The notes beneath the pieces were generated by a model. It did no database searches and was not told where the DNA came from. It saw only the letters and a program-made list of their open reading frames with translations. A program made the translations under genes and the position numbers. From assembly GCA_965655095.1 (NCBI GenBank), contig OZ296652.1:79918001-79982000 (forward strand): a stretch of 64,000 nucleotides of DNA, written 5' to 3'. Of this stretch, positions 9,064 to 58,739 are shown piece by piece; position 1 is the first letter of the stretch; each line of letters begins with the position of its first letter. Source of the DNA: Haplodiscus bocki (taxonomy: Eukaryota).

Positions 9064-9769
9064 TTTGGAGGAAATGACAATTGAGATTAACTTTACTAGA
9101 TCAAAGCAAGATTGTAACTTACGAATACCGGAGCTGAGTCGGGTTATTTGTATGTTAGCTGCAGGGTCAATCTTCCTTGGGTAGTCCAGGAAGGATAATG
9201 CTGATGATTGAATTTCGGCTGAGACATAATTCGGAATTGCTATAGAAAATTTGCAAAAGGGGACAGTTTCCGCGTATTTTGTCCGTATCTTGGAATTTAG
9301 AATGAATTCTAAATTACCACGGCAGCAGACGAGGTGAGACTTGGTCTATGTAGCGCCAATCTCTTTCGAGAACCTCGTGAGGGTCGTGCAGTATAAGATT
9401 CACTCTTGCTTCAGAACCGAAGTTCTTCCACGGAGTCCGCACAGGCTTCTGTATTACAGAAGCTAGCGTCAATGGACACTGTTTAGACTCCAGTGGCAAG
9501 AGTATGGAATAAGTCAGCAAAGGAAAAGGAATTTTGGCTAAGACACAATTTAGATTTGTCTTTGAATAATTTCGATGAGATGTAATTAGAATTTGGCAAA
9601 GACATAATTTGAAAAGGTCCTAGAATATTTTCGCTCGCTCCAAAAGAAGAGAAGAATTAGTAAGGTAAGAAGAGAAGTGAAGAGAAGTTCGAAGTTAAGA
9701 GTAAAAGAGTTTCGCCACGAGTAATGAGGCAAGTGAGCGGGAGCGAGCAATTGAAAATTGTGGCTGAGC

Positions 9770-9843
9770 GCTGGGTATTTGTACCCTGTTTGGTCACGTG
9801 ACCAGGTCACGTGATCGAGCTTGTTGGTCATGTAGCCAATTGG
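9770..9843 (-). promoter_or_regulatory. Putative internal Pol II promoter (CCAAT, two CACGTG E-boxes, TATA-like)
   Basis: Minus-strand order: CCAATTGG (~9836-9843), TCACGTGA twice including the palindrome GGTCACGTGACC, then TACAAATA, upstream of ORF relic 9314-9520. Confidence 0.35.
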
Positions 9844-35368: not shown

Positions 35369-36177
35369 CCGTAAAAGGCAATTCTTCTGATGTTCACTAT
35401 TAACATACGTGAATTTTGAAGCAGTCATTACTCTAGACGCTTGGGCGGAGATGAAAACATTGATTTTGGCTGGCTGTTTTATCTAGGAAGTAAAGCAAGC
35501 ATTTCATGTTGAAAAACTAGATTCTTGAAAGTTTATTTTCTCCTGGAAATTTAGCCCAAGTTTGATATTAATTATAGATTTTTCAATGCATTTTTCAAAA
35601 CCTCACACAATTTTTCGTCGCAGTGTTTGACCTTATATTTATTGTGCCTTTTTAATAAATTACGTGAATGAAGTTTGAATTTTGCTTAATCGCTATTTTC
35701 AGCCCGATATCATCCTTCATTTTTTGTTTATTGCTACAAAATCAGATAGAAGTCTTAATGGCATTAAAAATGACGTCAAATTCACTAATGCATTTGATTC
35801 ACTTTCTCACTTTGGCTGCAAGGCACCAAGCAAAGCTCTTCAATATTTCAAGGTCATATTTCTACCAGTGCGAGATGCAACAAATTCAATATTGGATTTT
35901 ACCATTTTGTGTACGCGGTTATGCTTTCTTTCTGTAAGCTCCTTATGTTTTAATTGTATTACAGGAGCAAGCGTGGAAAATGTTTTTCGCTTGACTTTTG
36001 AAGCAAAGTCCACTTGGTTTGACTTATTGAGCCGGAGCGTTGGCACCGTTCTATTCCAGACGACAACGAACAACAACTATTGTTGTGGTTTTGAAAGCGA
36101 CTGGCGGCGTTTGGTTTTGACCGGTTTCGAGAACTGGCTGTGCAGTGCAGTATAGCGTAGCACAAAAGGACGGGGGC

Positions 36178-36424
36178 ATGGGAGCGACCAATTTTTTGAG
36201 CGCGATCATCCATGCGTTTGTAGTGTCTCTTTACGTGTACACGTGGTACTGGACTGGCTTCAACACTTGGCAGCGGTTCCATCTGAAGGAGAGACGCAAG
36301 TGCTACCACTTCATCTCTTGGTGGATCTTCCTCAACCAGACTTTCTACTTCATTGTCATCTTCTGCTGCGATCTGCTCAAAGTCTTCTTCGAACCCTCCT
36401 GTATCCAATCATATCACGTCATTG
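36178..36424 (+). CDS. AIG1: FAR-17a/AIG1/ADTRP-family membrane protein, coding exon 1 of 3
   Basis: MGATNFLSAIIHAF...YHFISWWIFLNQTFYFIVIFCCDL aligns without gaps to AIG1 [24 protein letters not shown] (recalled). Donor G|GTAAGT, phase 1. The symbol is family-level, not proven orthology. Confidence 0.85.
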
Positions 36425-36924
36425 GTAAGTCACGGAACTGCAAACTCTCATATCCTCTTTGTGATACTGAACTTTCCAAAAGCTGTTGATGGTTAAATTC
36501 TGTTGAAGTTTCATCTAATTTCTCCGAGTTCGATGATTTCAGAAAGAACTCATAGAATTAAGAGCTCCAACAAATATACATCAGTCAGAAATTAACCGTC
36601 GATGCATTTTTAGTCGGGGCCAAATTATTTTAATGACTCACGTTTACTTCTGAGAAATGCCATAAACTAATAATTTTGAATGAATTTTTATGGGTGCTAT
36701 TGTTTGAAATTTGGACCATATTTGAAAAAAGGGATGATACACTAGTTTTTGAGCATTTTTCTACCATTTTTGGAAGATTTCGTTAAATTTTATGCTACTC
36801 AACATATTATTTCTCGAAAGAGAGCTAAAATTTAAGGGCAGATCCATAGCTACAGAAAAGTACCTGAAAATTTACAATACTCCACGCCTGTCTCGACGTT
36901 TACCTATGAGATAGTAAGTATATG

Positions 36925-37029
36925 TTTGTGCCTGGCTGAAAACGGGCCGAGGTGATTTGTGTCCGGACTCGAAGGCACGAAGTGCCAAAGGTCTGCATAT
37001 CTCGGGGGCCGTTTTCAGCCAGGCACAAA
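36925..37029. repeat. Small hairpin/MITE-like element with perfect 21-bp TIRs
   Basis: tttgtgcctggctgaaaacgg ... ccgttttcagccaggcacaaa, with internal ggcacgaagtgcc mini-hairpin. Confidence 0.85.
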
Positions 37030-37904
37030 GATTTTGTTACCTAGCGATCTGTTTCTTCCTCGTCCAATTTGCGCCGTCCAATCTTCAAAACTCGAAAAAT
37101 TCTCCCATGTGATTGTTCAAAAACTAACAAAAAATTCCAAAAATGATGAAAAAATACTTTGACGACTAGCTGGGAATGCTAATCCGCGTTTTCAATAATT
37201 GCTTTCCTGAGGTTTTACTGAGTTTTGCTTCGTGATTTCTCAATTTTTTTTGTCCATTTTGCTTCATTTTTATATATCTGCATTTTTTTTGAAGACAAAT
37301 GATTCATCCTTATATTTAATCTATCGTGCAGAAATAGCTGGAAGAAATGCCAAAATGGTCAGCCTGGCCGATTTTCTGACTTTTCAAAACGGACCGCTAG
37401 ATAGCAAATGTTTTTTAGGTTACCGCTTTTCGCAAAATGTTTCGAATCTGAAATATGATTTTTGAATGTATTGTGTTCACTTTTTAATCAAATAAAACTC
37501 AGATTGTTTGCCGAGTGTTTTTGAATTCCAAATCCTGCATAAAGTGGAGCTAGTGAACTATGTCTCGGTTTTTCGGAACTATGAATTTTTCTCTGACCTC
37601 ATTGCCGAAGGAATGAAGCAAGCAAGTGGAAATAGCAACCCAATCAAAAGCGCGAATGAACCCCGCAATTGCGTTTCGGCTATGATGTCATGATGATCAT
37701 GCCGAATGAATAGAGCTAATGAGTTTATCAAGTCGTCCGCTACATTCACACCGCTTTATTTGTACAACGCGATTATAGTGAGTCCGAAGCCGTAAAGTAA
37801 CTTTTTTGATTCCACGGAAACAGGATGAAATAAGAAGGTTTTGTGAAAAAAACAACCGAAGTCAGCTCAAAATTCGCATGTTTATTAAATCATCAGCTTG
37901 TTAT

Positions 37905-38390
37905 TTTTCGCCCATATTTATAAACTCGAAGGAAAATCATCCAGTCAAAGCGGTGCGTTTTTAACGTTTTCTTACCAGTTGGCTGGGAAGAATGCCCAGA
38001 TTGTGAATTTGACTGTTTTTTATTGCTAAATTATAGCAAATTTGCCGTAGAATGCGATTGAAATATTAAGATTTTTCAAAACGTACGAAATTTTAGAATT
38101 TTTTGAAAAAAATAGATGTTTTTTTGAGAGACATTTGAACTTTTTCAAAATCGTTAAAGGGAGCAAATTTGTTGTAGAATGCGTATCAAATGATATTATT
38201 TCTTGAAAATGTATCTTGCAACTTAATTGTGAAATTTTCTTTGCAAAAAAGTCCGGAATTTTTTTAAATTTGGAAAAATTAGAAAATATATGAAGAAAAA
38301 GTGTTTTTGAAAAAAAGGCTTCCTTTTGAAAGGCATATTCAACAAAATTGGAGGGCAGAAAAGATTCCTGTGGTAGCCGGCCGTCTTGTT
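37905..38390 (+). mobile_element. Helentron/HINE-like repeat copy
   Basis: Starts tttttcgccc and ends ggagggcag...ggtagccggccgtcttgtt (subTIR, hairpin, CTTGTT). Confidence 0.6.
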
Positions 38391-39394
38391 GTGATTTAAA
38401 TCCTCAAATTAGGCTCTGTTCATTAGTGTTCTGTTTTTTTTCGCTCACAAAATCATTACCGCCAAGAGACCGCCGGAGCGAAAGAACCTTTCATCTTCAG
38501 TTCTTTTTGAGCGGAATGGTCTAAAATCTTTTTCGAGACCTCGCGGATGTCGAAATCATTTTGACTTCTAAATTTGCTCATCAATAATGTTGAAAAACTT
38601 GGATACAAATTTTCGAGAAGACAGATCCTGGAAAATACTTGAACGGATCCTTACAATGAATTGGACAGATTAAAAACTTAATCTGCCATCTAGCAGAAAG
38701 AAGGGTTTGCTAGTAGTTGAAATGGTACAATCACGTCATTCAACATTTGATTCATCAAACTCAAGCCAACATACGTAAGTAGTATTGTAAGGGGGGGCTT
38801 AGTGCTATTTTGGCTCCTTTGCAGCTTTTGCTCCAATAAGAAAGTTTGGCAGTATATTGACCAAGAAAACTTTTTTGATAGCTTAATGACAAGTGAAACC
38901 ACAGAAGCGAACCTAAATTAGATTTGATAGCTAAATGCAATTTTTGACTCCCAAACCGAAAATTTTCTAAGTCAAAAAGTTCAAAGTACAAACTCAACCG
39001 AAACTGAATTTTGTTGACTATGTACACACTAAGTAAACCAGCTGTCAAATATCGTTGACAACGCGAATTTTCCACGTATTATTGACAGTTTTACAAATTT
39101 TCCCTTGAATAACTTTGACATCTGTTTGCGAGCTATCCACTATATGACAAAAATTTCTACATTGACAGAAATCAGACAAGTTTTCGGAAAAACCCATCTT
39201 TTTTTCAAAAAACCACATTTTGGTACGTTTTGAGAAATCTTACTATTTCAGTCGCATTCTACGGACAAAAAACTTTCAAACTCAGAACCGGATACTAGCT
39301 TCAAGTTAGACATTATCAATTGGGAAAACGTTCAATTCCAGCTTTTTGAGTGTATGATTTTCCTTCCATATTTAAATTTGGGCGGAAAATAAAA

Positions 39395-41300
39395 GTCTGA
39401 ATGAGTCCAAAAACGGCGATGGGCAACACTTGAACGTTAGTCTTACAATACCAAAAAGCAACCGACTTTCTGAAAAGCCGTGGTTTAGCAAACATATAGC
39501 CGAAGAGATAGTTCTGGATCCCGAACTTAGTTAAACATTTGATGCATAACTGGGCGAGTCCAAAACCATGCTGCAAAACAATTAAAGGACAGTCTGAAAA
39601 TATTCAAAACCCAAAGATTTTGAACAACTAGAACCGAAATTAAGGTAACCCAACCAAACCAACTGTTTCATGAACAATTTTGGGTGAGTCCAAAAGCATA
39701 TTGGAAAAACAATTAAACGTTACTGTCACAACGTCTCAATCAAAAACACTCTGAAAAGACGGTTCTTTCCGAAACTTACCAAAAAACTGCTCTTACAACT
39801 CCGAACTTAGGTGTTTGTGGGCGAGTCGAAAAACTGCAAAACGATTCAAATTCCAACTGAACTAAACTTAAATTGTGTTGACTTGGGAAATCCCAAATTC
39901 AATTGGGAGCGATTAAACGTTACTATTATGAAGCGCGAAAATTAAAAGTCTTTGAAAACGTGTTGCTTTGCAAAATCATGTCAAAAAGGTTGTTTCGGAC
40001 CTATAAGCAGACATCTGATATAAAAGCCTTGTGGAGCAAAAAAAGCCATCTTCTGAGAAATGGAACGCAACCCTCAATGCCGATGACCAAAAGGGTTGTT
40101 GGAAAGCTCAATCTTTTTTCCGCTTCAAATCAAAAATGCGATTTTAGACCTTTAAATTATTCAAGAAGATTTTTCATGCGTTAGACATAACGAGCCCAAA
40201 GCTATATTGAAAAACAACCAAGCGTTGGCATCACATTACTTAAAACTAAAACGTTTTCTGAAAATGCCGTGCTTTTGCAAACCGACTGAAAAATTGTGGC
40301 TTCAATCCCCGGATATGCTGTGAACAATTAGATAGCCTTGTGCAAACCCAAAAGCAATTTGGAAGCAATTAAACTTTACTACTTCACTACGGAAAGCAGA
40401 AAAGTTGTCTGAAACTGTCGTGCTTTTGATATTTTATCTCAAAAAGGTATTTTACACCTTCGGCCTCAAGTAAACAAGTACGTACAAGCTAAAAAAGAAC
40501 AGGTAACCCCATAGCCATGTTGGAAAAAAATGACCGTTAGCCTCAAGCTTTCTAAAAATCACAACCAGGAAGGTGCTTCTAGTCGTCTGAACTAAACTAA
40601 ACTTATGATCTGCAGCCTTGCAAAACACAAAAATTCATAATTAAAGCAATAAATGGCTTTTTTTGAATTACGGAAACAAATCTGCCTGAAAATGCCCTTC
40701 TTTTGCAAACTGACATCAAAAGGTTTTTCTAGAGCTCTGAACTTACGTAAAAAATTGACCTGCAGGTCTGAATGAGCCCAAAAACCATCTGGGAAAAAAT
40801 TTTGAGCGCAAGTCTACCATCTCCGGAAAATAAAGTCCTGGAAATGGTGCATTTGTAAACTCACATCAAACAATGCAATTTATAATAAATCAAACGTTTG
40901 TTGTGCAAGTCCTGGTGAGCTCATGTTCTGAAACACTAAAGTTAGTCGCACGCTACTATAAACCCAAAGTCTATCTCAAAATGCCACACTTCACGCAGTT
41001 TCCAGCAAAAATGGTTATAGTCATGCGAGTGCAACTTAGGATTTACGGAAGAGTCTTGGGCGAGTCGGAAAACCACGTTGGGAAAACCATTGGAGGTAAT
41101 TTATGCATAAACTTGAACAAAAGGACTTTCTGAAGAAAAGAGCGATTTCAGGAAGTTGACATAAAAAATTTCGAATGAAACATACAAATATTATTGAAAT
41201 AAGGTACTGCATTCTCGATCGAGTCCGAACAGTGCAGTGACAGCAATTCAAAGTCAGTTTGACATAGGCTAAAAGCAAGATTTCTTAGAAAATCCATTCT
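39395..41300. repeat. Degenerate ~150-bp tandem array within the left arm (mirrored at ~47080-48985)
   Basis: Recurring gggcgagtccaaaa...aaacaattaaacgtt...ctgaaaatgccgtgcttttgcaaac at ~39401, 39552, 39682, 39819, 40190, 40340, 40771 and 41058. Confidence 0.75.
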
Positions 41301-41880
41301 GTTGCAAACTCACATCAAAAATGTGTTTGAACTTTCTTAACTGTAATAACGTGTATTGTGCAAATGTTCAGCAGTACAGCAACAAGTTTGAGAACAGTGA
41401 AAGGTTTAATGCAAACTGATGAATCATTTAGGAAGTGCTTTTGTTTTTAAGACGACATCAGAAATGTTGGTTGTAGACACCGGTTATTAACTGAAAAGTT
41501 GATGTGCAAAACAGTGCGAGCTCCAAGACAAAACTCCAAACGGCAAAATGAAATCTTTACTGAACCAACTCTCGTTCGGAAGTCTGTTCTCGCAAAAGTT
41601 TTAACCACCGAACGATAAAAGTTAGGGAGTGATGTTTGCGTCCAAAAACACAATAGTAGAAATCCGATCCGAGGCGATCACAACTTTCCGCTAATACATG
41701 AGTTTTTCGGCAATATCTCATTGTAATCATGACTACAATCACAGCAAAGTAGCAGAAAATTGGGAGGAGGCCTAGAAAACGTTTTTATTCAGCTTTTAAA
41801 ACGAAAAAAAAAATGGACAGAATTTCTTTTTACGAGGTAATTTTTTCAAGCATTTATGAACAATCAATGTTCCAACACCA

Positions 41881-42506
41881 TTCGAGTGTGAAAATTAGGT
41901 GCGTGAAGATAGTCTTCAATACTGTTGCCACAAAGTTTAGCTCTTGTTTCGTTCTGATTAGTGGAGTAATTGATGAAACTCCAATGTATTATACTAACAA
42001 GAAACGTTAACATGACCTGAATGAGTACAAGAAACAGCGCTGTTTGAACTTTCAAAAGTTCAGCCACACTGTTTCAAGTTTTATATCAAACGAGTCAATC
42101 ATTCAATTCAATTCACGGATCCACAAATGTCAGTTCAAAACATGAGACTGATGCAAAACACTTGAGTAATATTTTTCAGCAATTGACAACAATCAATACC
42201 CAAAGAACGGTTTTCTGGAAATTTAGCTTTCGCATTCCCAAGACTTTTCGAGTGTGAAATTTAGGTGCGTGAAAATAGCATCCAATGCTGTTGCCACAAA
42301 AGCAAGGTGCTGTTTTATTTGATCAGTAAAGCAATTGATGAATATAAAATGTATGATACCAACCAGAAACGTTCACTTGATCTGAGTGGAAACAAGAAAC
42401 AGCGCTGCCTGAACATTTAAAAGTTCACTCCAACTATTTCTAGTTTCCTATCAAAATACTCATTTATTCAGTTCAAGTCAAGGGTCCACAAATGTCAGTT
42501 CAAAAT
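41881..42506. repeat. ~260-bp diverged direct duplication within the left arm (mirrored at ~45878-46502)
   Basis: ttcgagtgtgaaa.ttaggtgcgtgaa...tccacaaatgtcagttcaaaa at 41881-42141 and 42248-42506. Confidence 0.85.
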
Positions 42507-45500
42507 TTGGAACTGTTGGTGGGTTGATACAAAATACTGAAACTACTTCTGCAGAGTTATCGTCAGCATATCAGTTTTCACGCATCAAAGTGTTTTTAGG
42601 CCTGTCTCTAAATTCAACTCTAATCTTCCACATCAAAGCTCATCAAAAGAAAGAGCAGACTTGAAGTTCTTGGTGCTGAATAGCGACTAAAGACAAGAAA
42701 ATTAAAGAAACTTGACTTGGACAAACCATAAATAATGAATGATGAAAGTTTCCGCTCCATTTAAAATGCTGCATATTGATATTTTGCGTTAAAAACTTGT
42801 CTGATGCTTCATTCAGCAAAAATTTAAGCCTCACTTGGGACCTTGAACACCCTCCATTTTCCCGTTTGCTTTCTGCCTTCCATTACCAAGGGAAGTGAGG
42901 CTTCCTGGTTCTGTTTATGGGTTGAAGTCCGCAGTGCTTTCTAAACTGAGAAGCTCCTCAAATTTTCAAAAGGTTGTGTTCTTCAGAGGGTAACAAAGGG
43001 CGATGCAAACTTTGGGCAAGGCAGCGAATGGACCTTGTTTGCGACGCTTTTTGCCAACCTCTCAATTATAGTACCTTAGAGAAAAGAATGAGCAATGTTC
43101 CACAAGCAAAGATCCACTTAGCCGAGTTCTGCTGTGTTAACTTCTTCATATTAGGTGTGTTCTATGAAACAATAGCATTTGCTCTAACGCAGCTGGGAAA
43201 TTTGTTTTTTTTTTCGAAATACGATTCCGGGCAACATCTGGTACCTTTTTACATTAAGCATCATAAATTCTACTTTATAAAAAAACCCAGCTTCACTTTG
43301 AACTTAGTGGGTAAAATAAAGCCTGAATAATGGAGTTTCTCACTGCGGACGCTAGTTGTGTTTCTCAGTAACTTTCAATTCATGTCTGCAGGTTTTACAA
43401 CTGGGCAGAAACAACATGAGCAGATATTGTGTGAACCTCACCGATCCAAATTTCAAGACTCTGGCCATGAGGGATCTTCTCATGCCAGCCATCTAAAAAG
43501 CTTTACTGAGTTTGAATCACTGCTCCTTGCTTTTAGTCCGAGGCGATTTCGCTGCTTTGAAACTAATTAGATAGTAAAGCATCTGTGGGAAAAATTTGGC
43601 AGGAAACCAAAGTTGAAAAGAGCGATTGCTCGTTTCCAGTTTTTTCGTCATGCACATATGCCACACTCCTTTAGAGTACCCTTACAAGATGAGTCAGATT
43701 GAGGATCGCTTGTGTGCCATGTTTGTTGCTCAACATTACAAAGCTAACACCAAAGCGCCCGCAGAAGGCTCAAGTTGAAAATTCAGGAAAGGATTTTCAC
43801 GAAATCAGGTAAAAGCTCGAGCAATAACTCAAGTGGAGGCATGGGCACAAAGTTATTCAACCGCTCGACTGACGTAATTTTTGACTGGATCATAGTATTG
43901 GAATGAAGATTCGCTCATTTGATGTCTTTTTGAAACCTTCACTACTTTATGGCAAGTGGAAAACTGCAAAATGCGCCCAAATGTGAAAACAAAATCTTCA
44001 AAACTAATTCCTCTGGAATATTTCGAACTGAAGAAGAACCTTCTACATAAAGCACAAACTTTTCTTTGTCTACTTTTTATATTATATTCAAAAGTAGATC
44101 TTTGTTCCTGCGTTTGTTGACGGTTTCATATTGAGCCAGACAAAAGACACACAGCATTCAGCAGTTCTAATCTCTCCGGTTTCGACGGAAGGCTCAGCAT
44201 CTACTTGAGGCCATTCAATTGGAGGTCCTTTTAGAGTGCTGCTGTCAAAACTATGCCATTTTGACTGGCCATATTTTCACAAAAGAAGCAAAGTAATCAA
44301 AAAGCTGACCTTCGTGAACGGCGGCTGCAAATACTTTTTGAAAAAGCTTCGATCAATGTTTTGTCGAATCAAAATCGTATTCTTTTGTCTCACTAGTAAC
44401 CACCAACTTGTTTCTCGCAGTCACAATTGCGTCTTTTCACTTCCAGATAGTGCAGGTTTCTCGTTTTGTTGACTGGAGGCATTACCCATCATGTTCAGCT
44501 ACTGAGTCAGCATTGTATCGAGTATCGGACAAGTGCTCGATCAGAAAAAGTGGACAAAGTGGCTCTTTTTGAAGTTACTGAAGAATCGAAGTCAGTCTCG
44601 TTGTTTTCCCGCTGAACTTGGGTCCTGCAAAATTTCAACTCTACCGAATGTCATCTTGTAATGTCCTAAGACCTATCCGCTCACTTTCGGGCTTTGCTGT
44701 GGCAATATGAACCAACTGATAGTGAATCTAGAATGCATCCAAGGTATTTGGTTCCATGAGACTACACTTAACAACGCTGTCAGAAAGTTATCGATTTTTA
44801 TTGGATAGCTTGGGGAAATTTCTCACCTAATTCGTGTTGTGGCAAAATCGTCGAGACAATGCTTTTCTTTACTCCGTCTAACCTAGTTGTTTTTGATTTT
44901 TAAGAAGCTGGTGTACATTCCTGAAGTCGTAGAATTGTTAACATAGTCCACGTGTGTCCAAAAGCTCGTGGTTTCATTCGAATCTCTCAAAATAAAACAA
45001 ACTTGAGGCTCCACCCAAAGCTTCACTCGCGTCTTTGTTCGATTTTGGGAGCATCATGCAACTGAAAGTGAATTACCGTAGTGACTCATAGTATGGCCGT
45101 GAACTCAAAGTAGAATTTATGATGCTTAATGTAAAAAGGTACCAGATGTCGCCTGGAATCGTATTTCGAAAAAAAAACAAATTTCCCAGCTGCGTTAGAG
45201 CAAATGCTATTGTTTCATAGAACACACCTAATATGAAGAAGTTAACACAGCAGAACTTGGCTAAGTGGATTTTTGCTTGTGGAACATTGCTCATTCTTTT
45301 CCCTAAGGTACTATAATTGAGAGGTTGGCAAAAAGCGTCGCAAACAAGGGCCATTCGCTGCCTTGCCCAAAGTTTGCATCGCCCTTTGTTACCCTCTGAA
45401 GAACACAACCTTTTGAAAGTTTGAGGAGCTTCTCAGTTTGGAAAGCACTGCGGACTTCAACCCATAAACAGAACCAGGAAGCCTCACTTACCTTGGTAAT

Positions 45501-48500
45501 GGAAGGCAGAAAGCAAACGGGAAAATTGAGGGTGTTCAAGGTCCCAAGTGAGGCTTAAATTTTTGCTGAATGAAGCATCGGACAAATTTTCAACGCATAA
45601 TATCAATATGCAGCATTTTAAATGGAGCGGAAACTTTCATCATTCATTATTTATGGTTTGTCCAAGTCAAGTTTCTTTAATTTTCTTGTCTTTAGTCGCT
45701 ATTCAGCACCAAGAACTTCAAGTCTGCTCTTTCTTTTGATGAGCTTTGATGTGGAAGATTAGAGTTGATTTTAGAGACAGGCCTAAAAACACTTTGATGC
45801 GTGAAAACTGATATGCTGACGATAACTCTGCAGAAGTAATTTCAGTATTTTGTATCAACCCACCAACAGTTCCAAATTTTGAACTGACATTTGTGGACCC
45901 TTGACTTGAACTGAATAAATGAGTATTTTGATAGGAAACTAGAAATAGTTGGAGTGAACTTTTAAATGTTCAGACAGCGCTGTTTCTTGTTTTAACTCAG
46001 ATCAAGTGAACGTTTCTAGTTGGTATCATACATTTTAGTTTCATCAATTGATTTACTGATCAAAATAAAACAGCAGCTTGCTTTTGTGGCAACAGCATTG
46101 GATACTTTTTTCACGCACCTAAATTTCACACTCGAAAGGTCTAGGGAATGCGAAAGGTAAATTTCCTGAAAACCGTTCTTTGGGTATTGATTGTTGTCAA
46201 CTGCTGAAAAATATTGCTGAAGTGTTTTGCGTCAGTCTCATGTTTTGAACTGACATTTGTGGATCCGTGTATTAAATTGAATGACTGATTCGTTTGATCT
46301 AAAACTTGAAACAGTGTGGGTGAACTTTCGAAAGTTCAAACAGCGCTGTTTCTTGTATTCATTCAGGTCATATGGACGTTTCTTATTAGTATAATACATT
46401 GGAGTTTCATCAGTTAATCCACTAATCAGAACGAAACAAGAGCTAGACTTTGTGGCAACAGTATTGAATACTATCGTCACGCACCTAATTTTCACACTCG
46501 AATAGTGTTGGAACATTGATTGTTCATAAATGCTTGAAAAAAATTCCTCGTATAAAGATATTCTGTCCATGTTATTTTTTCCTTTTAAAAGCTGAAAAAA
46601 AACGTTTTCGAGGCTTCTTTCCACTTGTATGCTACTTAGCTGTGATTGTGGTCATGACTACAATGAGATATTGCCGAAAAACTCATGTATTAGCGGGAAG
46701 TTGGGATCGACTCGGATCTGATTTTACTATTGTGTTTTTGGACGCAAACATCACTCCCTAACTTTTATCGTTCGGTGTTTAAAACTTTTGCGAGAACAGA
46801 CTTCCGAACGAGAGTTGGTTCAGTAAAGATTTCATTTTGCCGTTTGGAGTTTTGTCTTGGAGCTCGCACTGTTTTGCACATCAACTTTTCAGTTAATAAC
46901 CGGTGTCTACAACCAACATTTCTGATGTCGTCTTAAAAACAAAAGCACTTCCTAAATGATTCATCAGTTTGCATTAAACCTTTCACTGTTCTCAAACTTG
47001 TTGCTGTACTGCTGAACATTTGCACAATACACGTTATTACAGTTAAGAAAGTTCAAACACATTTTTGATGTGAGTTTGCAACAGAATGGATTTTCTAAGA
47101 AATCTTGCTTTTAGCCTATGTCAAACTGACTTTGAATTGCTGTCACTGCACTGTTCGGACTCGATCGAGAATGCAGTACCTTATTTCAATAATATTTGTA
47201 TGTTTCATTCGAAATTTTTTATGTCAACTTCCTGAAATCGCTCTTTTCTTCAGAAAGTCCTTTTGTTCAAGTTTATGCATAAATTACCTCCAATGGTTTT
47301 CCCAACGTGGTTTTCCGACTCGCCCAAGACTCTTCCGTAAATCCTAAGTTGCACTCGCATGACTATAACCATTTTTGCTGGAAACTGCGTGAAGTGTGGC
47401 ATTTTGAGATAGACTTTGGGTTTATAGTAGCGTGCGACTAACTTTAGTGTTTCAGAACATGAGCTCACCAGGACTTTCACAACAAACGTTTGATTTATTA
47501 TAAATTGCATTGTTTGATGTGAGTTTACAAATGCACCATTTCCAGGACTTTATTTTCCGGAGATGGTAGACTTGCGCTCAAAATTTTTTCCCAGATGGTT
47601 TTTGGGCTCATTCAGACCTGCAGGTCAATTTTTTACGTAAGTTCACAGAGCTCTAGAAAAACCTTTTGATGTCAGTTTGCAAAAGAAAGGCATTTTCAGG
47701 CAGATTTCTTTCCGTAATTCAAGAAAAGTCATTTATTGCTTTAATTATAATTTTTTGCGTTTTGCAAGGCTGCAGATCATAAGTTTAGTTTAGTTCATAC
47801 GACTAGAAACACTTTCCTGCTTGTGATTTTTAGAAAGCTTGAGGCTAACGGTCATTTTTTTCCAACATGGCTATGGGGTTACCTGTTCTTTTTTAGCTTG
47901 TACGTACTTGTTTACTCGAGGCCGAAGGTGTAGAATAACTTTTTGAGATGAATTATCAAGAAGCACGACAGTTTCAGACAACTTTTTTGCTTTCCGTAAT
48001 AAAGTAGTAATGTTTAATTGCTTCCAAATCGCTTTTGGGTTTGCACAAGGCTCTCTAATTGTTCACTACATTTCCGGGGATTGAAGTCAAAAATTTTTCA
48101 GTCAGTTTGCAAAAGCACGGCATTTTCAGAAAATGTTTTGGTTTTATGTAATGTGATGCCAACGCTTGGTTGTTTTTCAATATAGTTTTGGGCTCGTTAT
48201 GTCTAACGCATGAAAAATCTTGTTGATTAATTTAAGTGTCTAATGTCGCATTTTTGATTTGAAGTGGAAAAAACATTGAGCTTTCCAACAACCCTTTTGG
48301 TCATCGGCATTGAGGGTTGCGTTCCATTTCTCAGAAGATGGCTTTTTTTGCTCCACAAGGCTTTTATATCAAATGTCTGGTTATAGGTCCGAAACAACCT
48401 TTTTGACAAAGCAACACGTTTTGAGAGACTTTCAATTTTCGCGCTTTATAATAGTAACGTTTAATCGCTCCCAATTGACTTTGGGATTTCCCAAGTCAAT

Positions 48501-49666
48501 ACAATTTAAGTTTAATTCAAATGGAATTTGAATCGTTTTGCAGTTTTTGGAGTCGCCCACAAACATCTAAGTTCGGAGTTGTAAGAGCATTTTTTTATGT
48601 AAGTTTCGGAAAGAACGGCTTTTTCAGAGTGTTTTTGATTGAGACGTTGTGACACTAACGTTTAATTGTTTTTCCAATATGCTTTTGGACTCACCCAAAC
48701 TTGTTCATGAAACAGTTGGTTTGGTTGGGTTACCTTAATTTCGGTTCTAGTTGTTCAAAATCTTTGGGTTTTGAATATTTTCAGACTGTCCTTTAATTGT
48801 TTTGCAGCATGGTTTTGGACTCGCCCAGTTATGCATCAAATGTTTAACTAAGTTCGGGATCCAGAACTATCTCTTCGGCTATATGTTTGCTAAACCACGG
48901 CTTTTCAGAAAGTCGGTTGCTTTTTGGTATTGTAAGACTAACGTTCAAGTGTTGCCCATCGCCGTTTTTGGACTCATTCAGACTTTTATTTTCCGCCCAA
49001 ATTTAAATATGGAAGGAAAATCATACACTCAAAAAGCTGGAATTGAACGTTTTCCCAATTGATAATGTCTAACTTGAAGCTAGTATCCGGTTCTGAGTTT
49101 GAAAGTTTTTTGTCCGTAGAATGCGACTGAAATAGTAAGATTTCTCAAAACGTACCAAAATGTGGTTTTTTGAAAAAAAGATGGGTTTTTCCGAAAACTT
49201 GTCTGATTTCTGTCAATGTAGAAATTTTTGTCATATAGTGGATAGCTCGCAAACAGATGTCAAAATTATTCAAGGGAAAATTTGTAGAACTGTCAAATAT
49301 ACGTGGAAAATTCGCGTTGTCAACGAATTTTGACAGCTGGTTTACTTAGTGTGTACTTAGTCAACAAAATTCAGTTTCGGTTGAGTTTGTACTTTGAACT
49401 TTTTGACCTAGAAAATTTTCGGTTTGGGAGTCAAAAATTGCATTTAGCTGTCAAATCTAATTTAGGTTCGCTTCTGTGGTTTCACTTGTCATTAAGCTGT
49501 CAAAGAAGTTTTCTTGGTCAATATACTGCCAAACTTTCTTATTTGAGCAAAAGCAGCAAAGGAGCCAAAATAGCACTAACCCCCCCTTACAATATTACTT
49601 ACGTAGTTCGCACGTTTGAATCAATAATACTATCCTGCTCCTAATTTGATTTCGTTTTTTTCGCAG

Positions 49667-50376
49667 ACTACTATTTCTGTGGAGTTGTGCTCCCTTCGGC
49701 ACTGCACTCCTTCATAGTGTTCTGGGGCTCCAGGTTGCTTTTCCATTTCCCGGTGCCCTTCTTCGAGTCATTCGGTAAAATGTGGCATCTAGGATCAAGC
49801 AAAGAGAAATCCCCTGAAGATTCTCCCTCCCACAGAAACAGAGCACTGCCTGCAATCGCCAAAGACAGTGAAGATGAAGCTAGAGAAAGAGAAGCCGCCG
49901 CTACTGACAATGCTGCTGCAGATTTATCATCGAAAGCTCTCCAGGAAATTCAAATCGAACATGACGAGAATCTTCGAGTGCATTGCAACGAGTTCAATTC
50001 AGAAGTGCTTAACATTAATACAAACGTCTCAACAAATGGGCTTCTATCCCCTGTAAACAATCAAAACACAGCTCCCTCTCAAAGGGACATTTCCAAATTA
50101 GGAATCAGTAACTTCCTCTCTATCAACAGTACCTTTGAGGACGTCAGATCTTCAAATACTACCTCAAGGAATGTATCATTTGATGGGCGTAGTGAACACT
50201 TTGAATTAGCCACACCCCGAATAGAGGTGCCCAAAGAAGGGTACGATAGAAGACTAAGCAATAACCCTTTACCATCTCCAAATAACTCTTCTATCAACAA
50301 TCTTCCGCCTCAGAACACCGATCTGAGTGTTATACTGCCTGACTTTCACTACGGAATACCAAAATGGGTGCTTCAG
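49667..50376 (+). CDS. AIG1: FAR-17a/AIG1/ADTRP-family membrane protein, coding exon 2 of 3
   Basis: Acceptor tttttttcgcAG|AC; the phase-1 join gives GAC(D). DYYFCGVVLPSALHSFIVFW matches AIG1 DWMLAVLAFPVGVFVVAVFW. The exon ends IPKWVLQ|GTATTG (phase 0) and its 710 nt are fully open. Confidence 0.85.
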
Positions 50377-50849
50377 GTATTGTTTTTCTTTGGTTACTTT
50401 CAGTTCACCTCCTCATCAAACTTTAATTTATACTGAAAGATTAAGGGCTGAAAGGTAGTTTTTATCGGAACAAAGTAGAAATTTTTCAATTGAAAAAAGT
50501 TGAGCGCTGCATGCCGATCGTGTGACGCAATGTATCTAACTGTTCTTATCAACTTTAGAAACATGTCACAATATTGAAATTCAGGAATTTGAAACATAAT
50601 AGACCTGAGCTTGATTTGCAAAAAAATCCAAGACTTTCGAGCTTTTGGTTTATTATTTTTCCCCAGTATATATTAGTACATGGGTAGAAAAATTTTCAAA
50701 GGGTTGATCATTTGCCTTTTTTCCTGTCAACTTTGGCAAATGAGAAAATGTAGAAAGTGTCGCCATAGAGGTTCCGAAAAATATTTTTCAGTTTGAGAAG
50801 AAACCATCAAAAAGCCACAGAACAGAAAATTTCCGGACTTTCATCGCTT

Positions 50850-53760: not shown

Positions 53761-55883
53761 TGCATTCGGATGTCTTAGATTTAAAAACCTGAAGCACACA
53801 ATCTGATACACATTGCAATGTTTGAAAAATAGTTTGGTTTACGAAGTGTGGACATCTAAATGGTGCCTCTTTTCCTTCCGGGTGTGTATTAGCACGCATG
53901 ATACTGTGATTCAATTAGCCGCAGTAGCGAAATCTTTGACGTCAAACATACCAATATTTATTTTAGAAAGCCAGGACGGTTAGAATTGATTCAGCTAGTT
54001 TATCCGGTGCATATTTTCTCTCAAATGCCAACAAACTGAACTGAATAACACCCTGCTTTTTAAGTTACATGATGAATATTTGACAATGTTTGCAAAACTG
54101 GCCGAAGTTTTGTTGTTGTTTTTCTAGTTGCAATTTGTTTCAACTAGAATTTGGTAATATGTCAATATGGATTCAAAATTCAATAAAATGGGGAGTTATG
54201 CTGCAAAATTACACAGATTATAACATCCGGATTATGTTTAAAAAAATGTCACGCCACGCTTCTGACTTCTGAACGGTTTCATGACAACTTCAAAGCTTGT
54301 TTCACGCATTTGGTGGAAAGGAAGTAAAACCACATGCGGTTTTTCTAAAATTCCCACTTTATTATTGTTACTCCCGAAAAAAGGTTGTTTTTGCCAAGAC
54401 GAAAGCAGTAAGTTTTATGCTAGCACATGTTTCGATGCTCTGTAAAATGTTACGGATAATTGAACAATCATATAATTTAATTCTATCAAAATTTTTGACG
54501 TATGTTTTTAATAATGCTGTTGAAAGCAGATAAAAATTCTGACTGGAAAGAAATAACTAAGGTTTTCCCCCTTGTGCTTCTGTCAAAGGAGGCTCGTTCT
54601 ATCCTTGATCGAGTCTCAGGGAACCTTGATAACACTAAATTATTTAATGAAGAAAAAAGTTGCATATAAAATGTGACGCATAAGATGTCCTAAAACGGCT
54701 GCCATTCTTTCCTAGACTGTTTTGATTTGAAGTCTGAAGTCTTTAGAATGAGGACTCAGAATTTGGAGGCGTAAAAGTAATTTTATAGCCATTTCAACTA
54801 TTTAGACTAAATGTAGCGAGAAAACTAACGATTGATACATGTAATCAAATTTTTTAAGGGCTTTTTCAATATTCCCATCATTTTTGTATCCAAGTCGAAT
54901 TTCAAAGTCTTCTAGGTGTATGATGGATAGAATTAACGCAGTTTTTTGTCTTCGCTTGGATTTGTATGGGAATGGTGATGAAAAAGATCAGTATTTCGTG
55001 ATTCGGCGATTTCCGAAAACTTTTCTCAATGGCTACTTGTCTATTTTGTTCGTCACAAAGCTATCATAAGATCGCTCCTAATCAAAATTAGCCTTCGTAA
55101 AGGTCAGTTCCCTGAAATGAGAAGGTCCCTCAGCTATCAGCAGCTAGTTTGCACTCTTCCAAATTTTTACGGGCACTTGTATAACGTACGATCTTTGTTT
55201 CGTTGCATTCGTATGTTATGCTCGTAAGTTCAATGCTATCGCCATTAGGAAATGGCTATCGAGTTCACTCCTACACGAAGCTTGAATGTTCTCTTGAAAA
55301 CTTTAGGTATAGAAGCAGGTAAAAATGTCTCTCGGCGACCTCCGGGATCTTTTCCGCTTCCCAAATTTGCTTATTAAAACTGAAATGAATGAAATGAAAC
55401 AAAAATGATTTTTCCAAAGAAACTGAAATTGTTATAAAATCTCATTTTTAGATTTATAATCATCATTTTGTGCGGCAAGTTTTCCCATTGGAATACGTGC
55501 AATAATGCCTTGGCTCTTCAATTTTCAAAAGCGTATATACTCGACTCGTTCGCAGAGAAAGCGACTCTTGAAGGTAATTATTTGTACTTTTAAGATCACA
55601 ACGAAATGTCCTCTTTTTTTTCTATATCGACTTTTCTTTGAAGTTTTGATTTTAAGTTTAATATTATAGATTTCCATTGCAGTGAAAAATGAAAAAAAGT
55701 TCTCGAAAGCACCGTATTGCCCCATGCGAAATTTTTCGGTGCTGAGATTAATGACAATGATCAATGAAATCTTTGATGTTGGAAAATTTTCTATTGCAGA
55801 GTCACCAAAGCCCCACTCCGCGATAATTTTTGTCAATGAGACAAAAGATTCGTCACATTTGCGCGCCCGTTGATGTGCAGAGC

Positions 55884-56840
55884 GGTTTCATGTCATACCC
55901 AAAGTCATAATACGCAATGCCATAATACCCAATGCCAAAATACCCAATAAGACATAATAGCCAATTCCATTATACTCAATGTAACATAATACTCAACGCC
56001 CCAATACCCATGCTATACAAGCGAAAATAAAGTATAATTGCTCGTTAAATAATACTTGACTAATTAGCGTTATAATTAACTTCTCAAAGACAGTGATTTG
56101 AATTAGGTCCGAATGATATCGATAAACTGAACATGGTTTTACAAAATGCCGCTTTTTCTGAACAGAAATGGGTATAGTAACATTTTCCATTGGTCTCGCA
56201 GTGCCGAAAGTTTTTCATTGGGGAGTCTTTACTACATTCCATAAACCAACCAAACCACCTCCTCAAGACCTTTGGTTTCAGCCTTTTTGAAAAGTTTACT
56301 TATAGGGAAAGGAGATCATACACAAAGAATTTTGAACCGATGATTCCATTTTTCTCGAGAACACAAAGGTAGATACAATTCATAGTGTTTAATATCGATT
56401 TAATATCTCAAAAATATCGAAAACAGGAAACCGCCTGACAGAAATAGTTTATACTAAATTTCGTATTTCCCGTCCAAAAATTTTTGGAAAGCAATACCAA
56501 ATTTCGTATTTTTAGTCGAAAAATTTTCAGAAACTTTTCCAAATTTCTTTTTTCTCGTTCATAAATTTTCGCAATTAATACCAAATTTCGTAATTCTTGC
56601 CCAAAGTTTTTCAGAAACAATCAAAACTCACTCAAAAGTGATTTTGTGACTTTGAAACTGTGGTATTTTTGACTGGTAATCAAATCTTTAAAAATGAGAG
56701 AAAATACAAGACACTGGTAATTACTTAATTATGCAAGACGCTGGTAATTAGCTATTTAATAAATAAGCAAAAATGTTTCTTTAAATTTGGGTATTATGTC
56801 ACATTGGGTATTATGACTTTGGGTAATATGTCCTGACACC
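55884..56840. mobile_element. ~950-bp MITE with 15-bp subterminal tandem repeats, copy 1
   Basis: TIR-like ggtttcatgtcata / tatgtcctgacacc, with arrays of ataatacccaatgcc inverted at the two ends. Confidence 0.75.
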
Positions 56841-57061
56841 ATCCGGTTCACTTCAGCGCTCAGCATCGCTAAGTTGGTCAATCAGCGTTTCCGAAGTGTG
56901 CAGAAATTAAACGAAAAAAGTAAAATTTATAAGAATTAAGACAAGCTTAACTGCCTAAAAACAAAAGAATTTTTGATACCCTTAAGAATATAGCCCAGAT
57001 GAAAAAAGAGAAAATAATCATTTACAAAAAGCTGAGCACAGCTCAAAGTCGGCTCTGCACC

Positions 57062-57990
57062 TTGTCAGGACATAATGCCCAATGCCAAAATACGCAATGC
57101 CATAATACCCAATGTGACAATACCCAAAATTAAACAATAATTTCTGCTTTTTTATTAAATATGTAATTACCAACGTCTTGCATAATTGAGTAATTACCAG
57201 TGTCTTGTATTTTCTCTCATTTTTTAAATATTTGATTACAAGTCAAAATACTGCAGTGTCAAAATCATAGAAGGGAAAATTTCTCGGATTTTCCATTGGG
57301 TTTTAATTGTTTCTGAAAATTTTTGGACAAGAATTACGAAATTTGATATTAATTGCGAAAATTCATGGACGAGATATAAGAAATTTGTATTTCTTTTGAA
57401 ATTTTTTAGACGGGAAATACGAAATTTAGTAGAAACTATTTCTGTCAGGCGGTTTCCTGTTTTCGATATTTTTGAGATTTTAAATCGATATTAAACACTA
57501 TGACTTGTATCTACCTCTGTGTTCTCGAGAAAAATGGAATGATCGCTTCAAAATTCTCTGTGTATTGTCTCCTTTCCGTATACGGAAATTTTTCAAAAAG
57601 GCTGAGACCAAATGTCTTAAGCACGTGGTTCACTCGGTATATGGAATGTAGTAAAGACTCCCCAATGAAAAATTTTCGGCACTGCGAGACGAATGAAAAT
57701 TGCTATTTTACCCATTTCTCTTCAGGAAATCCAGCATTTTTAGAAAGTTGTTTATTGATATCATGTTTATTTTAGTGATATCTTTCAGACCCAATTCAAA
57801 TCACATTCTTTGAGAAAATATTTAAGACGCCGGTAATTACTCAAGTACTAGTCAACGAGCAATTATACTATAATTTTCGCTAATTTAGCATGGGGTATTT
57901 GGGCATTGGCCATTATGTCACATTGGGTATTTTGGCATTGGATGTTATGACATGTCACCGAGCCCAATGCCAAAATACCCAATGTGACAT
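57062..57990. mobile_element. Same MITE family, copy 2 in opposite orientation
   Basis: Interior ~57160-57870 is the diverged reverse complement of ~56040-56760 (e.g. tatggaatgtagtaaagactccccaatgaaaaa). Confidence 0.8.
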
Positions 57991-58391
57991 AATAAATCCT
58001 ACTTATTTACGTTTGTTCTTTTGTATTTACTTTCTTTTGATTCCCCAAGCTATAGCGAACGTCCCTGTTTACTCTTTGATATCAAGCACTTGATTCGATT
58101 GTTCTCAAATTTCTCAATTTAATTCGCATCTTATTTTCCGCTTTCTGAAAATGGTGACTGTTCATCGCGTCAAAAAAGTGTTGATTCACAAAGCAGCGAA
58201 CAATTGAAAACTATTCACAACGGCAAAATTGACATGTAGACCATGAATAGTGAAATTTTCGTTTGTTTTAATGGTGAGCATTTTTTCCATGTGATTGGAA
58301 TTTTTGCTGATTTCGCGTAATCCCAAGTTTCTTCATTTCAAATTCTTAGCGCTGAACTCTTAGCATTCTTGATGCCGTTGTTTTTTTGCAG

Positions 58392-58739
58392 GTGACTCAC
58401 TCAGTGGTGGGACTGTCGGTTGTGGTAGAAACTCTTCTCTCGCAGCCGAGGGTGTCTGCTTCCTGCTGGCGCAACATCCACCTATCTCTTGTGCTGCCTT
58501 CCACTTACGCGATCTTCATCATCAGCCTGCGGTTGTGTCACATCAACTCACCCTCCCACTCGCCAATCAAGTTATCCTTCCTCCCAATCGTACTCGCTCT
58601 CTTGTGCAATTGTTGCGTAACTGCCCTCTGCGCACTGCTCTCTGTCTACTTCAACCGCTGTTCACTCTTTCTGCATGGGTACATCGACACCGGCTTCGAA
58701 AGTGCAGTCGTCATGGAGGGCCAATCGACTAGGAATTAA
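58392..58739 (+). CDS. AIG1: FAR-17a/AIG1/ADTRP-family membrane protein, coding exon 3 of 3
   Basis: Acceptor tttttttgcAG|GTG, phase 0. Joined IPKWVLQVTHSVVGLSVVVE matches AIG1 [20 protein letters not shown] (catalytic His codon 58398-58400). Two further hydrophobic helices follow; stop TAA ends at 58739. Total CDS 1305 nt. Confidence 0.85.
   Translation: MTHSVVGLSVVVETLLSQPRVSASCWRNIHLSLVLPSTYAIFIISLRLCHINSPSHSPIKLSFLPIVLALLCNCCVTALCALLSVYFNRCSLFLHGYIDTGFESAVVMEGQSTRN

What the first reader, a model, noticed from the sequence alone, without database searches (positions are those of the whole stretch)
36301..36378. AIG1/ADTRP-family hydrolase with Ser at the catalytic Thr position
Known: AIG1 and ADTRP are transmembrane Thr/His hydrolases of FAHFA lipids (AIG1 T43 in WKFLT, H134). 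Seen: the gapless-aligned motif here is YHFIS (TCT 36316-36318, S47), while the His is retained (H322) and the GGxW motif is lost. Inference: a natural serine-nucleophile variant, or a pseudoenzyme with a new role.
Basis: partly seen in the sequence, partly recalled or inferred. Interest (0 to 1): 0.7.

Follow-up and report, generated by a model that had tools for sequence, protein, structure and literature searches.

The report
Divergent AIG1-like membrane protein with serine
This is a real, conserved three-exon animal gene for a six-helix membrane protein, a distant relative of the AIG1/ADTRP lipid hydrolases, with serine where they have the catalytic threonine; a few ordinary family members (snake ADTRP, a lancelet paralogue) also have serine there, so the find is modest.

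Summary
A three-exon gene (36178-36424, 49667-50376, 58392-58739, + strand) encodes a 434-aa protein with six hydrophobic segments. TCT 36316-36318 is Ser47 in Y-H-F-I-S at the start of TM2, and CAC 58398-58400 is His322 in TM4. The GG of the GGxW motif is absent.

An orthologue in a second assembly keeps both residues through synonymous codon changes. dN/dS is 0.03-0.09, so the gene is real and constrained.

Family assignment is only partly supported:
- Pfam gives no hit on any exon.
- An exhaustive HMMER search with exon 1 finds no relative.
- The spliced protein could not be handed to Pfam or AlphaFold, because it has no reference.
- In favour, language-model features of exons 1 and 3 both point to PF04750.
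- Also in favour, my hand alignment to AIG-family sequences printed in a paper supplement gives four collinear blocks (TM1-TM4). These place Ser47 on the catalytic Thr and His322 on the catalytic His.

Serine here is not unprecedented. Four snake ADTRPs and an amphioxus paralogue in two species carry it, and the wider superfamily is already described as nucleophile-variable.

The unusual features are the extreme divergence and a 188-residue insert between TM3 and TM4. Whether it is an enzyme or a pseudoenzyme is unresolved.

The parts
36178..36424 (+). Coding exon 1: residues 1-82 plus the first base of codon 83. Holds TM1, which includes His12 (36211-36213), a basic loop, and TM2.
   Evidence: ATG and G|GTAAG donor. 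90% identical to the L001 orthologue, dN/dS 0.027. Atlas features: best cluster PF04750, score 0.93.
36316..36318 (+). TCT, Ser47. This position aligns with the catalytic Thr of AIG1/ADTRP (Thr43 / Thr47).
   Evidence: TCC in the orthologue. No variant in 4 DNA runs. Hand alignment to the sequences.
36425..49666 (+). Intron 1 (13.2 kb). It holds a fold-back of about 10.8 kb, with arms at roughly 38792-43213 and 45169-49586, which ends 80 nt before the acceptor.
   Evidence: Inverted repeats 93-99% complementary. Splice sites.
49667..50376 (+). Coding exon 2: residues 83-319. Holds TM3, the long loop and the start of TM4 (I-P-K-W-V-L-Q).
   Evidence: Acceptor and donor. The phase fits exons 1 and 3. 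Orthologous blocks found in L001.
49771..50334 (+). Residues 118-305: a 188-residue Ser/Asn/Glu-rich insert between TM3 and TM4. It contains conserved islands, including R-N-V-S and R-R-L-S.
   Evidence: 64% identity to the orthologue overall, with fully conserved islands. The family members printed have only about 15-20 residues here.
58392..58739 (+). Coding exon 3: residues 320-434 plus the stop. Holds the rest of TM4, TM5, TM6 and the tail.
   Evidence: Acceptor tttttgcag|GTG and TAA stop. 79% identical to the orthologue, dN/dS 0.092. Atlas features: best clusters PF04750/Rost, score 0.85.
58398..58400 (+). CAC, His322. This position aligns with the catalytic His of AIG1/ADTRP.
   Evidence: CAT in the orthologue. 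W316+6 spacing and H-S-V as in the crinoid AIG1-like protein.

Best explanation
The locus is a functional gene under purifying selection. It encodes a 434-residue, six-helix integral membrane protein that is a highly diverged homologue of the AIG1/ADTRP lipid hydrolases (Pfam Far-17a_AIG1; the 'ATGY' superfamily). The two dyad positions are filled by Ser47, at the loop-1 end of TM2, and His322, at the loop-3 end of TM4.

The mechanism I think most likely is inferred, not shown. Ser47 is activated by His322 and attacks a lipid ester inside the membrane, forming an acyl-enzyme. That intermediate is then hydrolysed or passed to an acceptor, as proposed for AIG1 (Thr/His) and TMEM164 (Cys/His). 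A 188-residue insert between TM3 and TM4, probably cytosolic, carries conserved basophilic-kinase-like motifs and would regulate the enzyme or tether it. The substrate is unknown, and FAHFA hydrolysis is only one possibility.
For: The gene is real:
- Canonical, phase-compatible splice sites.
- An orthologue in an independent assembly with the same exon borders.
- dN/dS of 0.027 and 0.092 at dS of about 1.4-1.9.

Topology:
- Six hydrophobic segments.
- Loop 1 has 5 K/R against 1 D/E, so loops 1 and 3 lie on the same side, probably cytosolic. Ser47 and His322 both sit near that face (this step is inference).

Homology:
- Two non-overlapping pieces, exon 1 and exon 3, each have PF04750-bearing clusters as their best language-model match. 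Scores are 0.93 with 213 shared features, and 0.85 with 189.
- Hand alignment to Anneissia japonica XP_033099702.1 gives four ungapped collinear blocks:
  - TM1, L-S-x3-H-x4-S-x-Y-x-Y-x-W-Y: 8 of 19 identical.
  - TM2, [T/S]-x-W-x2-L-x-Q-T-x-Y-F-x6-D-L: 8 of 23 identical.
  - TM3, D-x8-P-x-A-x5-V-F-W.
  - TM4, P-x-W-x5-H-S-V-x4-V-x-E.
- The hand-computed BLOSUM62 raw scores of these blocks are 56, 38, 30 and 41.
- Saccoglossus XP_006814627.1 even shares W-L-N-Q-V-I-H, against W-V-L-Q-V-T-H here.

Dyad:
- Both residues are kept through synonymous codon changes.
- Serine is tolerated at this site in otherwise canonical family members.
- The superfamily uses Thr, Ser or Cys opposite an invariant His.
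Against: - No Pfam hit for any exon of the gene or its orthologue at E up to 10.
- No solved-structure relative by sequence.
- No HMMER relative for exon 1 at E<=0.001 in 1.84 billion representatives. The single hit is a spurious subtilase/FG-GAP protein.
- The word searches were blank.
- The block alignment is mine, made by eye after looking at about 20 sequences. Transmembrane composition inflates such scores.
- Family motifs after TM4 (Y-P-S, W-V-Y-P, L-G-E) and the GG and N-H motifs are not kept, which could mean the activity is lost.
- With only two sequences, conservation of Ser47 and His322 cannot be told apart from the near-total conservation of TM2 and TM4.
- No RNA run exists for this organism, so expression and splicing are not shown.
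- The fold was not tested. AlphaFold on exon 3 alone gave pLDDT 49.9.
Confidence: 0.55

Rival explanations
1. It is a pseudoenzyme. The protein is a true AIG1/ADTRP homologue that has lost catalysis and now acts as a scaffold, a lipid-binding protein or a regulatory membrane protein. The long loop would be its functional part, and Ser47 and His322 would be kept for structural reasons.
For: Several family motifs are lost: GG before the nucleophile, N-H before the catalytic His, and Y-P-S, W-V-Y-P and L-G-E in the C-terminal half (compare). The protein is too diverged for Pfam or HMMER. A large loop has been gained, with conserved linear motifs.
Against: The two dyad residues are exactly the ones retained, along with TM1 His12, Q54-T55, D65 and E332, which are also family-conserved. 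TM2 is 100% identical between two species at saturated dS, which points to more than a structural helix. GG and N-H are not universal in bona fide members either: starfish proteins lack GG, and one Saccoglossus protein has N-Q.
Confidence: 0.3
2. It is not an AIG1/ADTRP relative at all. On this reading it is an unrelated or orphan six-helix membrane protein whose aromatic-rich helices resemble the family by chance, or a member of the neighbouring Rost (rolling stone, PF21534) family.
For: There is no statistically supported sequence hit from any search tool. The Atlas scores are in the 'lead' range, and Rost clusters also appear.
Against: Four motif blocks fall in the right order, each in the matching helix. 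Rare residues (W, H, P, Q, D, E, Y) are matched at family-conserved columns, and the W+6 His spacing is identical. Two independent exons point to the same Pfam family. For exon 1, Rost ranks only 36th, at 0.76.
Confidence: 0.12

Closest known systems
AIG1 and ADTRP (Pfam PF04750 Far-17a_AIG1), the Thr/His transmembrane FAHFA hydrolases
   Same: Six transmembrane helices. The nucleophile position is at the start of TM2, followed by W, Q, aromatic residues and D-L. There is a TM1 His and a TM3 D...P...F-W. TM4 has P-x-W followed six residues later by H-[ST], then a Glu. The dyad residues lie at the same spacing from the N-terminus (Ser47 against Thr43/47/49).
   Different: Ser instead of Thr. 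The G-G, N-H, Y-P-S, W-V-Y-P and L-G-E motifs are absent. A 188-residue insert lies between TM3 and TM4, giving 434 aa against about 230-250. The protein falls below every Pfam/HMMER threshold when tested exon by exon. No activity data exist.
Snake ADTRP (e.g. Notechis scutatus, Pantherophis guttatus) and the amphioxus AIG1-like paralogue (XP_019632838.1, XP_035659014.1)
   Same: Natural serine at the catalytic-Thr column (W-K-Y-L-S) with the His retained.
   Different: These are otherwise canonical family members of normal length with all the other motifs. The protein here is far more diverged and carries the loop insert.
TMEM164 (PF14808), a Cys/His acyltransferase of the ATGY superfamily
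   Same: The same proposed architecture: a nucleophile on TM2 opposite an invariant His on TM4 of a six-helix core. It shows that the nucleophile can change and that the chemistry can be acyl transfer rather than hydrolysis.
   Different: The nucleophile is Cys. TMEM164 is only 10-15% identical to AIG1, and I found no specific sequence resemblance to it here.
Rolling stone (Rost, PF21534)
   Same: A multi-pass arthropod membrane family that appears among the Atlas neighbours and co-occurs with PF04750 in one cluster.
   Different: It ranks well below PF04750 for exon 1 (0.76, rank 36). There is no HMM hit, and no motif comparison was possible.

Membership tests
Pfam PF04750 Far-17a_AIG1 (AIG1/ADTRP family) | A match to the family HMM at or above the gathering score | tested here: not met
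   All three exons of the gene and of its orthologue, which together cover the whole protein, gave no PF04750 match at E up to 10. The spliced whole protein could not be submitted, because it has no reference and was not typed. A summed multi-segment score therefore remains untested.
Pfam PF04750 Far-17a_AIG1 (AIG1/ADTRP family) | Six transmembrane helices | tested here: met
   Kyte-Doolittle windows give six segments: 1-24, 44-70, 84-108, 313-336, 347-370 and 375-413.
Pfam PF04750 Far-17a_AIG1 (AIG1/ADTRP family) | Catalytic Thr at the start of TM2 (AIG1 Thr43, ADTRP Thr47) | tested here: not met
   The aligned residue is Ser47 (hand alignment). Ser also occurs in 6 of about 751 family sequences in one data set.
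Pfam PF04750 Far-17a_AIG1 (AIG1/ADTRP family) | Catalytic His in TM4, six residues after the conserved Trp of P-x-W | tested here: met
   I313-P314-K315-W316 ... H322-S323. The same spacing is seen in the sequences, and the His is conserved in the orthologue.
Pfam PF04750 Far-17a_AIG1 (AIG1/ADTRP family) | Collinear conserved blocks shared with bona fide members | tested here: inconclusive
   Four blocks (TM1-TM4) align by hand to echinoderm and hemichordate members, with BLOSUM62 raw scores of 56, 38, 30 and 41. No tool computed this alignment. The C-terminal motifs are not shared.
Pfam PF04750 Far-17a_AIG1 (AIG1/ADTRP family) | FAHFA hydrolase activity and fluorophosphonate labelling that depend on the dyad | not testable with these tools
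   Needs bench work.
ATGY superfamily (AIG1/TMEM164/GPC1/YwaF/YpjA) | A variable nucleophile (Thr/Ser/Cys) on TM2 facing an invariant His on TM4 of a shared six-helix fold | tested here: inconclusive
   At sequence level Ser47 is in TM2, His322 is in TM4, and both lie near the same membrane face. The fold itself was not testable: AlphaFold on exon 3 alone gave pLDDT 49.9.
Pfam PF21534 Rost | A match to the family HMM | tested here: not met
   No hit. Rost appears only as a lower Atlas neighbour.

The most novel reading that the evidence does not exclude
The gene founds a lineage-restricted, previously unrecognised subfamily of AIG1-type membrane enzymes. On this reading the subfamily works with a Ser/His dyad and has acquired a regulated cytosolic domain of about 190 residues between TM3 and TM4. 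It would act on a different lipid, or as an acyltransferase, rather than as a FAHFA hydrolase. It is invisible to Pfam and to HMMER searches of 1.8 billion proteins.
Probability: 0.2. Interest if true: 0.5.

Novelty: new variant of a known kind. Interest (0 to 1): 0.3.

Why it matters
AIG1 and ADTRP are the only known threonine-nucleophile transmembrane lipid hydrolases, and how their nucleophile is chosen is not understood. Natural serine versions offer ready-made tests of whether Thr is needed. They include this very diverged one, and also the canonical snake and amphioxus proteins noted here. The long conserved loop hints at a regulated form of the enzyme. Even so, serine at this site is already present in public sequences, and nucleophile swapping is an accepted trait of the superfamily. 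The finding extends known biology rather than overturning it.

Tried and rejected
Searches and models that gave nothing:
- Pfam on every exon of the gene and of its orthologue, at E up to 10: nothing relevant. The only hit was a chance SPATA24 match in the loop.
- PDB sequence search with exons 1 and 3: only chance LRP2 matches.
- Exhaustive phmmer with exon 1: one hit, P0003, shown to be a subtilase/LRR/FG-GAP protein. I rejected it as spurious.
- Word-index searches with the exon 2, exon 1 and exon 3 ORFs: only the window's own ORF and one orthologous ORF.
- A scan of JGI metagenome contigs with the exon 1 alignment: none.
- A search for a paralogue inside the window: none.
- Atlas features for the 42-residue TM3 piece: no usable hit.
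- AlphaFold on exon 3 alone: pLDDT 49.9. The model was too poor to compare, so I ran no fold search.
- RNA runs: none exist, so expression and splicing could not be checked.
- Rfam on the window: nothing.
- The sandbox holds no local Pfam or HH-suite database.

- Handing the spliced 434-aa protein, or AIG-family sequences read from the paper supplement, to Pfam, HMMER, hhalign or AlphaFold. These long strings have no reference and were not typed.
- A degenerate-motif DNA scan of metagenomes for AIG1 motifs. It would mainly have pulled vertebrate or human contigs.

An in-frame cryptic intron that would remove the loop was considered but not pursued, because there is no RNA evidence.

Full report
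**The observation**

The stretch 36301-36378 lies in the first coding exon of a + strand gene.
- The ATG is at 36178.
- TAC CAC TTC ATC TCT at 36304-36318 reads Y-H-F-I-S, and TCT 36316-36318 is residue 47.
- Exon 1 ends at 36424 with G|GTAAG, in phase 1.
- About 13 kb downstream, tttttcgcag|AC at 49666/49667 completes codon 83.
- That second exon runs to CAG|GTATTG at 50376.
- A third exon starts after tttttgcag at 58392 with GTG ACT CAC (V320-T321-H322) and ends at TAA 58737-58739.
- The spliced product is 434 residues.

**Is it a real gene?**

One other assembly, an ENA contig fetched as L001, carries the same gene.
- Exon 1 is 90% identical in protein, exon 3 is 79% identical, and the splice borders are the same.
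- Nei-Gojobori dN/dS is 0.027 for exon 1 and 0.092 for exon 3, at dS of about 1.4-1.9. That is strong purifying selection.
- Ser47 is TCT here and TCC there. His322 is CAC here and CAT there.
- Contigs of four DNA runs from two samples show no other letter across 36100-36500.

The serine is therefore genuine and selected. No RNA run exists for the organism, so expression and splicing are inferred only.

**Anatomy**

Hydropathy gives six segments: 1-24, 44-70, 84-108, 313-336, 347-370 and 375-413. Ser47 lies three to four residues into TM2, and His322 lies six residues after W316 in TM4.

Loop 1 has five K/R against one D/E. By the positive-inside rule, loops 1 and 3 are probably cytosolic, and both candidate catalytic residues sit near that face. 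This step is inference.

Residues 118-305 form a Ser/Asn/Glu-rich insert. It is 64% conserved overall but has fully conserved islands, among them E-D-S-P-S-H-R-N-R-A-L-P-A-I-A-K-D-S, S-R-N-V-S-F-D-G-R-S-E-H-F-E and R-R-L-S-N-N-P-L-P-S-P. TM1-3 are 85.5% identical and TM4-6 are 79.6% identical.

**Family assignment: negative results**

- Pfam gives no Far-17a_AIG1 match, and no Rost match, for any exon of the gene or of its orthologue at E up to 10.
- The PDB sequence search is blank.
- An exhaustive phmmer run with exon 1 against 1.84 billion representatives gives one hit. It is a subtilase/LRR/FG-GAP protein and is spurious.
- Word-index searches with the exon 1 and exon 3 ORFs, and a metagenome scan, are blank.
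- The exon 2 ORF found only the window's own ORF and the L001 ORF.
- AlphaFold on exon 3 alone was useless, with pLDDT 49.9.

The whole spliced protein has no reference, so I did not submit it to Pfam, HMMER or AlphaFold. That step is left out and is the main gap in this report.

**Family assignment: positive results**

The protein-language-model search was run separately on two non-overlapping pieces, and both gave PF04750-bearing clusters as the best hits:
- Exon 1: score 0.93, 213 shared features, an arthropod cluster.
- Exon 3: score 0.85, 189 shared features.

Supplementary Data 1 of PMC8394805 prints real AIG-family sequences. I aligned the protein by hand to the crinoid Anneissia japonica XP_033099702.1. 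This gives four ungapped collinear blocks, each in the matching helix:

| Helix | Pattern | Identical residues |
|---|---|---|
| TM1 | L-S-x3-H-x4-S-x-Y-x-Y-x-W-Y | 8 of 19 |
| TM2 | [T/S]-x-W-x2-L-x-Q-T-x-Y-F-x6-D-L | 8 of 23 |
| TM3 | D-x8-P-x-A-x5-V-F-W | not counted |
| TM4 | P-x-W-x5-H-S-V-x4-V-x-E | not counted |

- My hand-computed BLOSUM62 raw scores for these blocks are 56, 38, 30 and 41.
- I estimate the joint probability at about 1e-5. That is before correcting for membrane composition and for having looked at about 20 sequences.
- In this alignment Ser47 falls on the catalytic Thr, and His322 falls on the catalytic His. The catalytic residues are identified: ADTRP Thr47/His131, and AIG1 Thr43 with its His.
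- A Saccoglossus member even has W-L-N-Q-V-I-H, like W-V-L-Q-V-T-H here.
- The C-terminal family motifs (Y-P-S, W-V-Y-P, L-G-E) are not kept.

I put homology with the AIG family at about 0.85. Formal Pfam membership was not demonstrated.

**How new is the serine?**

In the same supplement the counts are:

| Motif | Count |
|---|---|
| W-K-F-L-T | 347 |
| W-K-Y-L-T | 381 |
| W-K-Y-M-T | 17 |
| W-K-Y-L-S | 6 |

The six serine cases are four snake ADTRPs (K-Y-L-S-F; Notechis scutatus and Pantherophis guttatus are shown) and one amphioxus paralogue present in both Branchiostoma belcheri and B. floridae. Serine at this column is therefore rare, under 1%, but recurrent, and it is conserved within lineages.

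Reed et al. (bioRxiv 10.1101/2022.07.06.498872) already describe the AIG1/TMEM164/GPC1/YwaF/YpjA superfamily as nucleophile-variable and His-invariant. They report Cys in TMEM164 and Ser, Thr or Cys in the bacterial branches. I found no paper on insect members or on a Ser variant of AIG1/ADTRP itself.

**Mechanism and rivals**

- Best reading (0.55): an active Ser47/His322 membrane lipid esterase or acyltransferase with a regulatory cytosolic loop.
- Pseudoenzyme (0.3): supported by the loss of GG, N-H and the C-terminal motifs. Against it, exactly the dyad is retained, together with other family-conserved polar residues, and TM2 is 100% conserved.
- Chance resemblance or another family such as Rost (about 0.12): supported by the lack of any tool-computed significant hit. 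Against it stand the collinear blocks and the two independent Atlas results.

**Verdict**

This is a new, very diverged variant of a known kind of enzyme. Its headline feature, Ser for Thr, already exists in public family members. The extreme divergence, the absence of detectable relatives and the 188-residue insert are the more unusual aspects. Interest is about 0.3.

Noticed in passing
window 38792-49586 (inside intron 1): A near-perfect fold-back of about 10.8 kb. The nested inverted-repeat arms are 93-99% complementary (for example 38792-39786 with 48592-49586, and 42313-43213 with 45169-46069). It ends 80 nt before the exon 2 acceptor at 49666/49667. The orthologous intron in L001 is 6.8 kb and holds Copia-like ORFs instead, so the fold-back is a species-specific insertion. 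Its effect on splicing is unknown.
   Followed up: partly
L001 about 9606-10006: The orthologue has an extra intron or insertion of about 400 nt inside the loop-coding exon. Candidate sites are AAG|GTACTA and tgaatgaag|GAGAAA. The window's exon 2 is uninterrupted there, so the loop region differs between the two species in gene structure as well as in sequence.
   Followed up: partly
PMC8394805 Supplementary Data 1: Four snake ADTRP entries (K-Y-L-S-F; Notechis scutatus and Pantherophis guttatus shown) and an amphioxus AIG1-like paralogue (XP_019632838.1, XP_035659014.1) carry Ser at the catalytic Thr column while keeping all other motifs. The paper itself says only that the residue is conserved 'across most vertebrate species'.
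   Followed up: partly
window 49771-50334 (residues 118-305): Fully conserved islands in an otherwise variable, Ser/Asn-rich loop. They include R-N-V-S and R-R-L-S, which resemble basophilic-kinase sites, and a 20-residue block E-D-S-P-S-H-R-N-R-A-L-P-A-I-A-K-D-S.
   Followed up: no
window 49781-50479 (database protein P0001): The public protein collection represents this locus only by a 232-aa ORF-caller product. It starts at an internal Met of exon 2 and reads through the TGA at 50434-50436 as Trp, into the intron. It is an artefact of prokaryote-style gene calling on eukaryotic DNA.
   Followed up: partly
window about 55840-55950, 56950-57130 and 57880-58090 (intron 2): Translations repeat a Q-C-x-N-T-Q-like unit (for example H-N-T-Q-C-H-N-T-Q-C-Q-N-T-Q) at three places. 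This suggests copies of a short tandem repeat or of a repeat-bearing element in intron 2.
   Followed up: no
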